Sequence record: NC_061448.1
Direction: 5' to 3' (one strand)
Length of the DNA: 64,000 nucleotides
The position numbers were made by a program, and so were the translations under genes. Of this stretch, positions 24,153-29,979 are shown one piece after another. The first letter of the stretch is position 1; each line of letters begins with the position of its first letter. The notes below the pieces were generated by a model. It ran no database searches. It saw only the letters and a program-made list of their open reading frames with translations, and was not told the origin of the DNA.

Positions 24153-24658
24153 ACGAATTACCGATGAACCTCGATCAAGCTGAACACATCATGGCCAGTG
24201 TGTTTACGCTTGCTGGTGCGTCGAAGTCAAAGCGTCGTGCTACTGCTGCGATGCTCATTCATTTCCATCACGGCTTTCCGACTGTAATCAGTAGCGGCGT
24301 GAACGGTACACAGCCGGGCGCGAGCAACGTCATGGAGAACGAAGACCTGACGCTTTCGCTCGACACTGTTATTCATGCTGAGGTGAATTGTCTCAATCGC
24401 ATGGAAGAACACAGCATGTGGGCAGAAGAAGAGGACATCTTGTTCTGCACTGATTCGCCGTGTCCGAACTGTCTCGCTGACCTCGAAGCTGAGGGCGTTA
24501 AGACAGTTGTGTATGCGCGTGAGTATCGCCTGACTGATCATCTCGACGCATCGAAGATCAAGATGTTCTGTCTCGATATGGACAGCGTTGTCCGACGTAT
24601 GCAGCACGGTATCGACCGCATCAATGACGTAATCGCAACAACACCAGCGTCTAACTAA
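24137..24658 (+). CDS. dCMP deaminase (zinc-dependent cytidine deaminase family)
   Basis: SGVNG, HAEVN, SPCPNC. Confidence 0.85.
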   Translation: MRCNLNELPMNLDQAEHIMASVFTLAGASKSKRRATAAMLIHFHHGFPTVISSGVNGTQPGASNVMENEDLTLSLDTVIHAEVNCLNRMEEHSMWAEEEDILFCTDSPCPNCLADLEAEGVKTVVYAREYRLTDHLDASKIKMFCLDMDSVVRRMQHGIDRINDVIATTPASN

Positions 24659-24683: not shown

Positions 24684-25430
24684 ATGAAATTTAGTTATCA
24701 ACCGTTTCAAGACTGGTCTAAGCCTAATGACGCGCAAGTGAAAGAAGTGGCAGATCAGGAAGACCGTATCTTTCTGGATTCGTTACAGGAGTTCGAAGAG
24801 ATGCAGCGGCGCAACATGCAGCGTTTTGCGCGTATGGTTGAATCTGATCCAAAGTTGAGGGCCCAAATGGAACAAGCTCGTCGTCACGACCACCGGCAGA
24901 AATTCGGTCCTATGGATTTTTCCAAAATCGAAGCGCGTGTAGCTGATACGTTTGCTCATTCGTCTGGTGTCGTTCGAGGTGTTGTTCAACGCTATCCGCG
25001 TATGTCAGATAATCTGCCTCGTGACGTTCTTATCAAAGCTGACGTAGCTCCGGGAAAACGTATGCTGCAAACTGATATTCATTTAGGCGACGTGAAGACT
25101 GATGACCTGTCGATGGCGATGATCACCGCAGCATTCGCTCTTAGCGGCGAGCAGCTTGGAGTAATCCCTGCTCCTGGTGGCGGTCAGTTCGTGGAACCGG
25201 AAACGCATCTGCCTCTGCACTATCTGCACTCTGATACAGGACCTATCGTCGATTTCAAAACATCAGGCGATCCAAAAGGTCCTCAGCCGACTGGTCGTGC
25301 GCTACGTGTTAGCCGAGGCTCTGATTGGTCTGCTGAACGTCGTGATCGTGCTGCAACGTCTGCGTCAGATCGCAAGAAACTCCGTGCTAAGACACGCGCC
25401 CAGAAGAAAGCACGTCGTAAACAACGTTAA
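24684..25430 (+). CDS. hypothetical protein with a basic C-terminus
   Basis: GAGG SD. Confidence 0.75.
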   Translation: MKFSYQPFQDWSKPNDAQVKEVADQEDRIFLDSLQEFEEMQRRNMQRFARMVESDPKLRAQMEQARRHDHRQKFGPMDFSKIEARVADTFAHSSGVVRGVVQRYPRMSDNLPRDVLIKADVAPGKRMLQTDIHLGDVKTDDLSMAMITAAFALSGEQLGVIPAPGGGQFVEPETHLPLHYLHSDTGPIVDFKTSGDPKGPQPTGRALRVSRGSDWSAERRDRAATSASDRKKLRAKTRAQKKARRKQR

Positions 25431-25439
25431 GGAACAGCC

Positions 25440-25928
25440 ATGTCTGATTTTAATGAGTTCAAAGATGGTTTTCTTCGAGCAGTTGGCGTAGACCCAAAGT
25501 TGCTCGACTTACCAGAAGACCCAGATGGTGCTGAAATCTTTAACAGCCTGTCTTCTAAAGATCAGCGCAAAGTCCGAGCAGGTCTTGCGCTGATGCAACT
25601 CCAAATTCCGGATGAAGTTCGTTATGAGTTACTGACGAACCATCTCGATGAAACTGAGCGTCTGGTAGATAACGCGTTTCAGGACCTGAGTGCCTCGCTT
25701 GTGAACAAGTTGGCGCAAGCAGGTAACGCGGAAACTAAATCGACACTCGGTAGTGTTCGTCTTGCTATGCTGATGAACATTCTGGGTTTTGATGATGCCA
25801 CTCTTAATGGCGTCTTGACTGACCCAAGTCTCGCTCGTCGCGCCAGCCTCGTTGCTGTGACGTGTATGAACGAGATGGGTCAAAAAATCCAACAATTGTA
25901 CGACGAGAAAAACAATGAGCCAACCTAA
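25440..25928 (+). CDS. hypothetical helical protein
   Basis: AAGGA SD. Confidence 0.75.
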   Translation: MSDFNEFKDGFLRAVGVDPKLLDLPEDPDGAEIFNSLSSKDQRKVRAGLALMQLQIPDEVRYELLTNHLDETERLVDNAFQDLSASLVNKLAQAGNAETKSTLGSVRLAMLMNILGFDDATLNGVLTDPSLARRASLVAVTCMNEMGQKIQQLYDEKNNEPT

Positions 25929-26061
25929 CGAAGCACCTAAAGCAGACGACATGGACCTGAGCATGAACATCCCAGGTCTTGACCCTGATGCAGTAGCACC
26001 TAACGGTGTTGATGCAGCAGCATCTGATGAAGGTTGTGAAGGCGGCGCCTGTAAAATCTAA
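25915..26061 (+). CDS. 48-aa peptide ending in a ribonucleotide-reductase-type tail GCEGGACKI (not in the ORF track)
   Basis: MSQPNEAPKADDMDLSMNIPGLDPDAVAPNGVDAAASDEGCEGGACKI; 14-nt overlap with the upstream stop. Confidence 0.65.
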   Translation: MSQPNEAPKADDMDLSMNIPGLDPDAVAPNGVDAAASDEGCEGGACKI

Positions 26062-26101
26062 CTCATGGGGCCTAGTGCCCCATTTCTGTTTGGGGAACAG
26101 T

Positions 26102-28526: not shown

Positions 28527-28876
28527 TGCCTCCTGTAATTCGTTTCAACGAGCAAACCCGCGAACTGCTGAGAAAGACATTCGGCATTGATTCACCTTTC
28601 ATTGTCGTGCGTCGTGAGCGCATCATCGAAGACGATAAGCCTTTCGGTGAGCGTGTCTATTTGAACAACGGCATTTACACCGTGACCGTACCTAACGTAC
28701 AGGGTCTCGATCTCGGCGATAAGCTGTATCTCGCAGAAGATATGGAAGTGTATGAGTGGCACCCGCACTTCGGTCTTCATCCTACCATCTATCCTTCTGT
28801 AAGCAACAACCAGAAGACTGCGCTCTCATTCGGCCTTCATCCTATCATCTATCATAAAGACAGTCGGAACTCTTAA
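28526..28876 (+). CDS. hypothetical protein with a short internal repeat
   Basis: FGLHPTIY / FGLHPIIY. Confidence 0.7.
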   Translation: MPPVIRFNEQTRELLRKTFGIDSPFIVVRRERIIEDDKPFGERVYLNNGIYTVTVPNVQGLDLGDKLYLAEDMEVYEWHPHFGLHPTIYPSVSNNQKTALSFGLHPIIYHKDSRNS

Positions 28877-29979
28877 TGAACAAGCAACCTCTTGATCTGC
28901 GCGATCCAAATCAGTACGAAGTTTATTCTCTGCATTGCGTAGACGAACAGTACATCAACCTCGGTAACGCTATTCTGGCTTGTGGTACTGACGAGCACGA
29001 CAACGGCCGCACCAACGATTCGTGGCGTACTCTGATTGGCATCGGCTTCCAGTTATCTAACACGTTGATCGCTTTCCCTGCGTTGCTGTCTGCGCGTAAG
29101 AACTGGTACGCTGCTGTTGATGAAACCTGCTGGTTCATGCGCGGCGACACGAACATCAGTTCGCTCAACTCCAAAATCTGGGACAGCTGGGCAGACGAAG
29201 ACGGTGAGTGTGGTCCTATCTATGGTCTGATGTGGCGCATGTGGCCTGACATTAAAACGTTCCCGACTATTGAGTCGATGAAAGAGCGTCAGATCAGCGA
29301 TGCAGAAATCGAGCGCATCGCCAAAGAAATCAATCGCATGAAAGCGGCAGGCTACACTGAAACAGAAATGGCCGATGGTCGTGTATGCTACGAAGGTACG
29401 ATTGACCAGTTCGCTAATGCGCTGCGTGACGTTATGGATCGTTCGCGCTCCCGTCGTATTCGCGTTCAGGCATTCAACCCAGGCTATCAGCATATGCAGG
29501 GTCTGCCTCCGTGTCATACGGAGTTTGAGTTCAATGTGACTCAACCAACTCCGTATGAGATTGCTCAGATGGAGGCGCGTGGCATGGCATCTTCCGACGC
29601 ATCGTTGCATATCGTTGTGACCATGCGTTCCAATGATGTGCTGCTGGGGCGTCCCTTCAACATCATGGGCTACAGCGCAATGCACCAACTGATTGCCAAG
29701 TGGGCTGGGTTGAACGTCGGTAGCTTCACGCTCAACACGACGAACACGCACCTGTACACGCATCACTTCGAAGCGTTCGAACAGCAGAAGCAACAGTGGG
29801 CAGCGCTCAGTGATCTGATGAAGAAAACTGGTCAGCCTATTCAGTACCCGCTGCTCGAAATCAGCGACGACATTCTCGGCCTGACGCCGGAAGAGTTGTT
29901 GGACAACGCAAACGCCGAGTGGTTCCAACTTCTCGACTACTCCCCTGCACCAATGGTTAAAGGACGTGTGACCAAATGA
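28876..29979 (+). CDS. thyA: thymidylate synthase (ThyA/Td type)
   Basis: GPIYG, SRRI, LPPCH, MRSND, GRPFN, NTHLYTHH. Confidence 0.92.
   Translation: MNKQPLDLRDPNQYEVYSLHCVDEQYINLGNAILACGTDEHDNGRTNDSWRTLIGIGFQLSNTLIAFPALLSARKNWYAAVDETCWFMRGDTNISSLNSKIWDSWADEDGECGPIYGLMWRMWPDIKTFPTIESMKERQISDAEIERIAKEINRMKAAGYTETEMADGRVCYEGTIDQFANALRDVMDRSRSRRIRVQAFNPGYQHMQGLPPCHTEFEFNVTQPTPYEIAQMEARGMASSDASLHIVVTMRSNDVLLGRPFNIMGYSAMHQLIAKWAGLNVGSFTLNTTNTHLYTHHFEAFEQQKQQWAALSDLMKKTGQPIQYPLLEISDDILGLTPEELLDNANAEWFQLLDYSPAPMVKGRVTK

What the first reader, a model, noticed from the sequence alone, without database searches (positions are those of the whole stretch)
25915..26061. Free-standing mimic of the ribonucleotide reductase C-terminal redox tail
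The 48-aa ORF is an acidic flexible linker ending DEGCEGGACKI-stop. E. coli NrdA ends DDGCESGACKI, where Cys754/Cys759 carry electrons from thioredoxin or glutaredoxin to the active site (established). No RNR catalytic domain is adjacent. The peptide could re-reduce host or phage RNR in trans to raise dNTP supply, serve a tail-less RNR encoded elsewhere, or act as a decoy for Trx/Grx. It lies between dCMP deaminase and thymidylate synthase. I know of no described stand-alone RNR tail.
Basis: partly seen in the sequence, partly recalled or inferred. Interest (0 to 1): 0.78.

Follow-up and report, generated by a model that had tools for sequence, protein, structure and literature searches.

The report
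Free-standing ribonucleotide reductase redox tail
A giant phage with no ribonucleotide reductase of its own encodes a 48-residue disordered peptide that copies the cysteine-bearing tail of its host's enzyme; it belongs to an apparently undescribed family of stand-alone "tails" that probably plug into the enzyme that makes DNA building blocks.

Summary
Window 25915-26061 (+) is gp039 of Erwinia phage pEa_SNUABM_1, a 48-aa acidic, predicted-disordered peptide ending DEGCEGGACKI. Solved E. coli R1 ends QDDGCESGACKI (Cys754/Cys759), Erwinia NrdA ends the same way, and 113 of 120 NrdAs not chosen by the motif end C-x-[GS]-G-[AG]-C-K-[IL].

The phage has no RNR of any class and no recognisable thioredoxin or glutaredoxin.

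gp039 is not an oddity. About 150 protein clusters of 34-245 aa end exactly with this tail. They occur in SPN3US-like jumbo phages, in unrelated small phages and in Neisseriaceae chromosomes (in Neisseria between iscS and iscU). They share an extra block (VEGGVD) that NrdA lacks, and no full-length RNR matches the family profile. Invariant residues are written with all synonymous codons.

Strongest functional clue: in one phage lineage a family member fused to a deoxyribonucleotidase lies 54 bp upstream of a class Ia nrdA that has lost its cysteine tail. A second fusion is to a MazG-type pyrophosphohydrolase.

Best reading: a trans-acting RNR redox tail, here aimed at host NrdA. The direction of the effect (booster, competitor or docking tag) is unresolved. 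I found no prior description.

The parts
25915..26061 (+). gp039 (MPK71_gp039, YP_010302161.1): 48-aa acidic, predicted-disordered peptide; member of the free-standing RNR-tail family (phrog_24014 / 14561 / 38753)
26026..26058 (+). NrdA-tail-like C-terminus D38-I48 (DEGCEGGACKI); Cys41 at 26035-26037 and Cys46 at 26050-26052 correspond to Cys754 and Cys759 of E. coli R1; the stop codon follows directly, as in NrdA
25969..26013 (+). Family-specific block upstream of the tail: IPGLDPDA (aa 19-26) and the VAPNGVD stretch (equivalent to VEGGVD in relatives); conserved in free-standing peptides, absent from NrdA tails; function unknown
26065..26093 (+). Terminator-like hairpin (7-bp stem, 5 G-C pairs) plus T-tract, starting 4 nt after the stop codon; suggests gp039 ends a transcription unit (suggestive only)
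25440..25928 (+). gp038, 162-aa protein of unknown function; its stop overlaps the gp039 start by 14 nt, which suggests translational coupling; a gene of similar size precedes the peptide in the other jumbo-phage genera, but no sequence similarity is detectable
24684..25430 (+). gp037, 248-aa protein of unknown function with a basic C-terminus; same operon-like block
24164..24658 (+). dCMP deaminase (gp036), upstream nucleotide-metabolism neighbour
28876..29979 (+). Thymidylate synthase (gp046), downstream nucleotide-metabolism neighbour

Best explanation
gp039 is a free-standing, trans-acting version of the C-terminal redox tail of class Ia ribonucleotide reductase (NrdA). The peptide is disordered and ends with the same C-x-G-G-A-C-K-I carboxy-terminus that NrdA uses to carry electrons from thioredoxin or glutaredoxin to its active-site cysteines. 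The phage has no RNR and no redoxin of its own, so the inferred targets are the host's NrdA and the host's Trx/Grx. Proposed mechanism: the peptide's Cys41/Cys46 pair is reduced by host redoxins, enters the NrdA active site as the tethered tail does, and re-reduces the active-site disulfide. This would add a second, diffusible electron shuttle and raise dNDP output while the phage replicates a 267-kb genome. Shown: the motif identity, the conservation, the predicted disorder, the absence of a phage RNR, the family's fusion and adjacency to nucleotide-metabolism genes, and a natural pairing of tail-less NrdA with a separately encoded tail in a relative. Inferred: binding to NrdA and to Trx/Grx, disulfide exchange, and the stimulatory direction.
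For: (1) The tail is 9/11 identical to Erwinia NrdA and its 8-mer is identical to that of Pectobacterium and Yersinia NrdA. E. coli R1 ends QDDGCESGACKI. 113 of 120 NrdAs not selected by the motif end C-x-[GS]-G-[AG]-C-K-[IL].
(2) 150 of 157 family proteins end exactly at ...C-K-[I/L], as NrdA does. The invariant residues use all synonymous codons and all three stop codons.
(3) The peptide is predicted to be disordered, like the NrdA tail (PMC9669993).
(4) In L142/L143 a family member (P0132) lies 54 bp upstream of a phage class Ia nrdA-nrdB. That NrdA stops at ...NTRDGSGDQL, with no counterpart of Erwinia residues 741-761. The P0132 tail is 55-63% identical to the free peptides.
(5) The tail is fused to a 5'-3' deoxyribonucleotidase (E=3e-15) and to a MazG-type pyrophosphohydrolase (E=2e-30). 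The free gene sits among dCMP deaminase, ThyA and MazG genes.
(6) The phage has no RNR of any class and no recognisable Trx/Grx.
(7) Re-reduction through the tail limits turnover, and a second reductant acting while the tail is away raises activity (PMC4078304).
(8) A separately encoded redox domain exists in class II RNRs, namely nrdJb (PMC5704485).
Against: Host NrdA already has its own tethered tail, which has a large local-concentration advantage over a free peptide, so the benefit of an extra shuttle is not obvious. Only one lineage (five contigs) shows a tail-less NrdA beside a tail gene; viral and metagenome scans found no second case. Bacterial NrdAs with cysteine-free tails have no family gene within 10 kb. 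N. gonorrhoeae RNR works with Trx/TrxR alone (PMC8865847, PMC8994553), yet Neisseria keeps the peptide, so it is not needed as 'the' tail there. The conserved block upstream of the tail is unexplained by a pure shuttle model. There are no expression data for gp039 or its SPN3US homologue gp234. No tool here could test binding.
Confidence: 0.48

Rival explanations
1. Competitive inhibitor or decoy. The free tail occupies the NrdA active-site channel, or soaks up reduced Trx/Grx, so the enzyme's own tail cannot regenerate the active site. In effect this would be a prokaryotic and phage analogue of yeast Sml1. It could shut down host dNTP synthesis during takeover or, in Neisseria, tie RNR activity to Fe-S status.
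For: Same motif evidence as above. Host NrdA already has a tail, so a free copy is more obviously a competitor. The family-specific upstream block could add affinity, as expected for an inhibitor. Small acidic disordered phage proteins often act as mimics that block host proteins (general knowledge). Sml1 is reported to inhibit RNR by interfering with regeneration through the R1 C-terminus (Zhang et al. 2007, cited in PMC5704485 and PMC4078304; the paper itself was not readable here). In Neisseria the gene lies in the IscR-controlled isc operon.
Against: A phage without an RNR needs host dNDP synthesis or salvage, and the gene sits with dTTP-synthesis genes. In L142 the tail-bearing protein is the only candidate tail for the adjacent tail-less NrdA, so there it must be productive. 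Fusion to dNMP/dNTP-processing enzymes fits cooperation better than blockade.
Confidence: 0.24
2. Docking tag or adaptor. The tail is a short linear motif that anchors whatever carries it to NrdA or to a redoxin, assembling a dNTP-synthesis complex. In gp039 the conserved N-terminal half would bind a phage partner, for example the translationally coupled gp038, with redox chemistry secondary.
For: The tail is appended to at least two different enzymes (deoxyribonucleotidase, MazG-type pyrophosphohydrolase) and to several unknown domains of 78-124 aa. The family has a second conserved block (IPGLD/VEGGVD) with no counterpart in NrdA. The gp038 stop overlaps the gp039 start. A multi-enzyme dNTP synthetase complex is described for phage T4 (general knowledge).
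Against: Both cysteines are invariant in all family members, which a pure docking motif would not require. gp038-like neighbours are not conserved in sequence across genera, and small phages and Neisseria lack them. Most members are bare peptides with no cargo.
Confidence: 0.16
3. A function unrelated to RNR, such as metal or Fe-S handling: an acidic CxxxxC peptide acting with IscS/IscU. On this view the likeness to the NrdA tail is convergent.
For: In N. meningitidis, N. flavescens, N. oralis and others the gene lies between iscS and iscU, about 70 bp upstream of iscU. One database protein joins the IscU N-terminus to the peptide. Acidic small proteins such as IscX and CyaY act in Fe-S assembly (general knowledge).
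Against: Other Neisseriaceae carry the gene at unrelated loci. The phage members sit with nucleotide-metabolism or replication genes, not Fe-S genes. Eleven-residue identity with NrdA, ending at the same carboxy-terminus, is too specific for convergence.
Confidence: 0.06
4. A non-functional remnant of a captured nrdA 3' end, or a chance ORF.
For: It is short, has no Pfam or NCBIfam family, and is annotated as hypothetical.
Against: It is conserved across five jumbo-phage genera and beyond, while flanking genes diverged past detection. The conservation is at protein level through synonymous codon changes. There are 76 representatives at E<=1e-3 in an exhaustive search. The family block upstream of the tail is not NrdA-derived.
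Confidence: 0.02

Closest known systems
C-terminal redox tail of class Ia RNR alpha subunit (E. coli NrdA/R1, Cys754/Cys759)
   Same: Same terminal motif D-D-x-C-x-[GS]-G-A-C-K-I ending at the carboxy-terminus, the same CXXXXC spacing, an acidic preceding segment, and predicted disorder.
   Different: It is not attached to any catalytic barrel and is encoded by a phage with no RNR. It carries an additional conserved block (IPGLD...VEGGVD) that NrdA tails lack. Family HMMs score NrdA tails about 15-20 bits lower than family members, and no full-length RNR reaches E<=1e-3 with the family profile.
NrdJb, the separately encoded cysteine-rich domain of split class II RNR (NrdJa+NrdJb)
   Same: A redox C-terminal module of an RNR encoded by its own gene (PMC5704485, PMC9669993). 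The L142 arrangement (tail gene next to a tail-less nrdA) is the class Ia counterpart.
   Different: NrdJb is a folded IscU-like plus zinc-finger domain of more than 200 aa and belongs to class II. gp039 is a 48-aa disordered peptide with two cysteines and no zinc-finger pattern, and in this phage there is no cognate RNR gene at all.
Sml1 (yeast) and related small intrinsically disordered RNR regulators
   Same: A small disordered protein proposed to act at the step where the R1 C-terminal cysteine pair regenerates the active site (Zhang et al. 2007, as cited in PMC5704485 and PMC4078304).
   Different: There is no sequence relationship. Sml1 is an inhibitor and does not carry the tail motif. 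The direction of gp039's effect is unknown.
Glutaredoxin domain fused to NrdB (Facklamia ignava)
   Same: Another case in which the RNR electron-delivery chain is rearranged at the gene level (PMC6187632).
   Different: There the redoxin is fused to the enzyme. Here the enzyme's own tail is detached and free-standing, or fused to other nucleotide-metabolism enzymes.

Membership tests
Class Ia ribonucleotide reductase alpha subunit (NrdA) | ATP-cone, all-alpha domain and ten-stranded catalytic barrel (Pfam PF03477, PF00317, PF02867; NCBIfam NF006578) | tested here: not met
   No Pfam or NCBIfam hit for gp039. There is no RNR domain anywhere in the phage genome. Control NrdAs from Erwinia and Escherichia match over their full length.
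Class Ia ribonucleotide reductase alpha subunit (NrdA) | Disordered C-terminal tail with the CXXXXC pair at the extreme C-terminus (C-x-[GS]-G-[AG]-C-K-[IL]) | tested here: met
   gp039 ends CEGGACKI, and 113/120 NrdAs end with this pattern. E. coli R1 ends CESGACKI. AlphaFold2 predicts no secondary structure, pLDDT 59.5.
Free-standing RNR-tail peptide family (phrog_24014 / phrog_14561 / phrog_38753; unnamed, function unknown) | Short acidic protein or C-terminal module with the block [FDGV or IPGLD]-x-V-E-G-G-V-D, then 3-5 residues, then D-D-x-C-x-G-G-A-C-K-[IL] and the stop | tested here: met
   PHROG hits at E=5e-15, 5e-14 and 4e-9. Profile searches give 101 and 76 members. Alignment A2 has invariant C41, G44, A45 and C46. 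Reciprocal HMM scores are 35-38 bits within the family against 18-21 bits for NrdA tails.
NrdJb / class II cysteine-rich domain | Folded IscU-like domain plus four-cysteine zinc finger and a terminal cysteine pair | tested here: not met
   gp039 has only two cysteines, is 48 aa long, and is predicted to be disordered. It has no Pfam NifU_N or zinc-finger hit.
Thioredoxin / glutaredoxin / NrdH redoxins | Thioredoxin fold with a CXXC active site | tested here: not met
   No Pfam hit, CXXXXC spacing, and no predicted secondary structure.
NrdB C-terminal tail mimic (peptides that compete for the beta-tail groove of NrdA) | Match of the N-terminal half to the NrdB C-terminal 10-mer (D-D-L-S-[DN]-F-[QE]-L type) | tested here: not met
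   A PSSM from 42 unique NrdB tails was compared with composition-preserving shuffles. Median z was 0.2-0.3, and 0-7% of peptides reached p<0.05.
Sml1-like RNR inhibitors | Binds R1 and blocks regeneration by the R1 C-terminal domain | not testable with these tools
   There is no sequence family to test against, and binding cannot be assessed here.

The most novel reading that the evidence does not exclude
Phages, and Neisseriaceae, encode a diffusible copy of the class Ia RNR redox tail that plugs into NrdA in trans. In phages lacking an RNR it would reprogramme the turnover of the host enzyme, and in at least one phage lineage it has fully replaced the enzyme's own tail. This would be a new class of RNR accessory factor and a new mode of viral control of host dNTP supply. 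The Neisseria copy, linked to the isc operon, would connect RNR regeneration to Fe-S status.
Probability: 0.5. Interest if true: 0.85.

Novelty: new variant of a known kind. Interest (0 to 1): 0.8.

Why it matters
Ribonucleotide reductase is the only de novo source of DNA precursors, and its re-reduction through the C-terminal cysteine pair is a slow, regulated step. A family of stand-alone tails would show that this step can be supplied or intercepted in trans by a 40-60-residue peptide. That would give RNR enzymologists a natural reagent for an old question: how the tail reaches the active site and the redoxins. It would also reveal a previously unseen way for viruses that lack an RNR to manipulate host dNTP synthesis. 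It would explain how class Ia enzymes with cysteine-free tails, found here in one phage and one bacterial lineage, can still turn over. The presence of the same peptide in N. meningitidis and N. gonorrhoeae, where RNR is being pursued as a drug target (PMC8865847), makes its role relevant to understanding that target.

Tried and rejected
(1) phmmer of the peptide against PDB sequences found nothing at E<=10, because the motif is too short. The comparator was obtained instead by scanning genomes with a back-translation of the phage's own tail and by querying the PDB with a fetched NrdA.
(2) 'Tail-less RNR elsewhere in this phage' is rejected. tblastn with NrdA and NrdB, a Pfam sweep of 31 ORFs of >=480 aa, and the RefSeq annotation all found none.
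(3) 'The N-terminal half mimics the NrdB C-terminal tail' is rejected by the PSSM and shuffle test.
(4) 'A conserved gp037-gp038-peptide-MazG module' is not supported. The neighbours are similar in size and order only. No similarity was detectable between this phage and the SPN3US, CR5 or Stratton neighbours, and no MazG homologue was detectable in this genome.
(5) 'The CTGTAAA DNA motif explains the tail' is rejected.
(6) The Pseudomonas and Aeromonas phage tblastn hits are chance-level (E=3-8, inside structural genes).
(7) The Psychrosphaera 24-codon hit (L038) is an ordinary nrdA whose frame is interrupted twice, probably by assembly errors, and is not a natural split.
(8) A search for a second tail-less-NrdA-plus-tail-gene locus in viral and metagenome collections, and near bacterial tail-less nrdA genes, found none.
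(9) The literature contains no paper with the tail string, no description of a stand-alone class I tail, and no expression data for SPN3US gp234. Zhang et al. 2007 could not be read.

Full report
WHAT IS THERE. The window is the first 64 kb of Erwinia phage pEa_SNUABM_1 (Alexandravirus, 266,939 bp), and window coordinates equal record coordinates. It runs from ATG to TAA and encodes 48 aa with 10 acidic and 2 basic residues, a pI of 4.05, and the ending DEGCEGGACKI. RefSeq annotates it as gp039, hypothetical protein. Its start overlaps the stop of gp038 by 14 nt. A terminator-like hairpin with a T-tract begins 4 nt after its stop; this is suggestive only. The dCMP deaminase lies two genes upstream and thymidylate synthase six genes downstream.

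IS THE LIKENESS TO THE RNR TAIL REAL? I used no remembered sequence. A degenerate back-translation of the phage's own last eight codons plus a stop was scanned over one genome per bacterial species. Examples from Erwinia and Escherichia are full-length class Ia NrdA (NCBIfam NF006578, 1-761 of 761), and the Pfam barrel ends at about residue 731. Three Erwinia species end QDDGCESGACKI, 9 of 11 identical to gp039. Pectobacterium, Brenneria, Yersinia and Proteus end ...CEGGACKI, the identical 8-mer. Solved E. coli R1 chains (2r1r_A and others) end QDDGCESGACKI at residue 761, which places the cysteines at 754 and 759. In a sample of 120 NrdAs chosen by similarity of the catalytic domain and not by the motif, 113 end C-x-[GS]-G-[AG]-C-K-[IL]. 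According to the literature this disordered cysteine pair re-reduces the active site and is itself reduced by thioredoxin or glutaredoxin, and CXXXXC is the E. coli-type variant (PMC9669993; PMC4078304).

THE PHAGE HAS NO RNR. tblastn with Erwinia NrdA and NrdB against the whole genome gives nothing except the gp039 tail itself, which is the best NrdA hit in the genome. A Pfam sweep of all 31 ORFs of >=480 aa finds no RNR domain of any class. The annotation lists none. Among 75 small ORFs there is no thioredoxin- or glutaredoxin-fold domain. ORFs of 136-479 aa were not swept by Pfam.

IT IS A FAMILY. tblastn finds homologues in Alexandravirus, Derbicusvirus (including Cronobacter phage CR5), Erskinevirus, Machinavirus and Seoulvirus, where it is SPN3US gp234. 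A profile search of 5.8 billion proteins gave 101 short proteins. An exhaustive HMM search of 1.84 billion representatives gave 76 at E<=1e-3. All are 35-245 aa long and none is a full-length RNR. Of 157 family proteins collected, 150 end exactly at ...C-K-[I/L]; the other seven look like shifted or extended gene calls.

Phage members share IPGLDPDA-x-VEGGVD upstream of the tail, and bacterial members share LDNLD-x-LL-x-x-FDGV-x-VE-x-GVD. Reciprocal HMMs score phage against bacterial members at a median of 35-38 bits, but NrdA tails at only 18-21 bits. The family is therefore distinct from NrdA and shares with it only the last ~11 residues. The conservation is at the protein level. In 20 distinct phage tail DNAs the invariant Cys, Gly, Cys, Lys and Ile use every synonymous codon, and all three stop codons occur. 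The neighbouring genes of SPN3US, CR5 and Stratton are not detectable in this phage by tblastn, whereas the peptide is. AlphaFold2 with the family alignment predicts no secondary structure (pLDDT 59.5, pTM 0.17).

WHERE ELSE IT OCCURS. Family members occur in ~30-47-kb phage contigs with a PolA replication module, in SU10-portal phages, and in Neisseriaceae chromosomes. In N. meningitidis, N. flavescens, N. oralis and others the gene lies between iscS and iscU, about 70 bp upstream of iscU. Other Neisseriaceae carry it at unrelated loci. The Neisseria enzyme does not need the peptide as its tail. Purified N. gonorrhoeae alpha2beta2 turns over with thioredoxin, thioredoxin reductase and NADPH alone (PMC8865847 and PMC8994553). 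In addition, 7mdi_A, which is N. gonorrhoeae NrdA (PMC11226230), aligns to its last residue with a tail-bearing query but not with a tail-less one.

THE FUNCTIONAL CLUES. Two natural fusions attach the tail to nucleotide-metabolism enzymes. P0132 is a 5'-3' deoxyribonucleotidase (phrog_2643, E=3e-15; tblastn to annotated phage nucleotidases) followed by the family block and tail. P0139 is a MazG-type nucleotide pyrophosphohydrolase (phrog_671, E=2e-30) followed by the tail. The P0132 tail is 55-63% identical to the free peptides over 40 residues.

P0132 lies 54 bp upstream of a phage class Ia nrdA (1008 aa with an intein) and nrdB, next to DHFR, on contigs from different samples. That NrdA ends ...TLYYHNTRDGSGDQL, and Erwinia residues 741-761 have no counterpart. 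This is a natural pairing of a tail-less class Ia RNR with a separately encoded tail. The five closest NrdAs (76% identical, in bacterial nrdA-nrdB-yfaE operons) also have cysteine-free tails, as does one NrdA on a 391-kb contig. No family gene lies within 10 kb of those. Further viral and metagenome scans found no second split locus.

HOW IT MOST LIKELY WORKS. Shown: motif identity with host-type NrdA; placement at the extreme C-terminus; invariant cysteines; predicted disorder; no phage RNR or redoxin; association with nucleotide metabolism; and one lineage where the tail has left NrdA. [quoted passage not shown] The published model that tail cycling limits turnover, and that a second reductant raises activity, makes this plausible (PMC4078304). 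I put this at about 0.48.

The main rival (0.24) is the opposite sign: a competitor or decoy, analogous to Sml1. A third reading (0.16) is a docking tag that recruits cargo or partners to RNR; the diversity of fusions favours it, and the invariance of both cysteines weakens it. An Fe-S-related role (0.06) rests only on the Neisseria context. Chance or a gene remnant (0.02) is contradicted by the conservation.

COMPARISON WITH WHAT IS KNOWN. It works like the NrdA tail but is not an NrdA, since no catalytic domain is present. The only separately encoded RNR redox module I found described is NrdJb of split class II enzymes, a folded IscU-like plus zinc-finger domain (PMC5704485, PMC9669993). gp039 meets none of NrdJb's defining features. 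It is a member of three PHROG families of unknown function. Full-text searches found no paper containing the tail string and no description of a stand-alone class I tail. These searches cover open-access text only.

VERDICT. The exact function is inferred and its direction is unresolved. I rate the novelty as a new variant of a known kind (an RNR redox tail encoded apart from the enzyme, here by a virus that lacks the enzyme) and the interest as 0.8.

Noticed in passing
window, 17 sites (e.g. 20780, 21967, 31895, 36433, 40824); copy at 26049 inside gp039: CTGTAAA occurs 17 times against 7.8 +/- 2.8 expected, 16 of them on the + strand. The extended context is about A-A-T-CTGTAAA-T, and many copies lie 20-50 nt upstream of + strand gene starts, so this is a candidate phage promoter element. 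The copy in gp039 lacks the extended context.
   Followed up: partly
L087:5063-5191 (N. meningitidis); also L013, L023, L090, L104: Neisseria chromosomes carry a 42-aa family member between iscS and iscU, about 70 bp upstream of iscU. The database clusters have hundreds of members. It is annotated as hypothetical where annotated at all. One database protein (P0110) joins IscU residues 1-50 to the peptide.
   Followed up: partly
L168:932-3208 and L170:934-3210 (bacterial nrdA-nrdB-yfaE operons); L169:10001-12244 (391-kb contig): These class Ia NrdAs have C-terminal tails without cysteines (P0161-P0164, P0167; P0202). How these enzymes are re-reduced is unknown. No family peptide gene lies within 10 kb.
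   Followed up: partly
L142:1215-6180 (metagenomic phage contig): Gene order is DHFR, then a deoxyribonucleotidase with the RNR-type tail (P0132), then an intein-containing tail-less nrdA, then nrdB. The phage NrdB tail (...SLGDLEDL) also differs from the enterobacterial type.
   Followed up: yes
window 24684-25928 against L002-L009: gp037 and gp038 have positional counterparts of similar size in the SPN3US, CR5, Stratton and Caitlin phages, but with no detectable sequence similarity. gp037 ends in a strongly basic stretch.
   Followed up: partly
phage genome outside the window (L130-L133): The Pfam sweep picked up intein/HINT domains, a VgrG3-like C-terminal domain, PAAR and Tlde1 domains, a C-5 cytosine methylase and a Csm6 HEPN-like domain among the phage ORFs.
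   Followed up: no
L038 (Psychrosphaera algicola): An ordinary nrdA whose reading frame is interrupted twice, so that its tail appears as a separate 24-codon frame. This is most likely an assembly artefact.
   Followed up: yes
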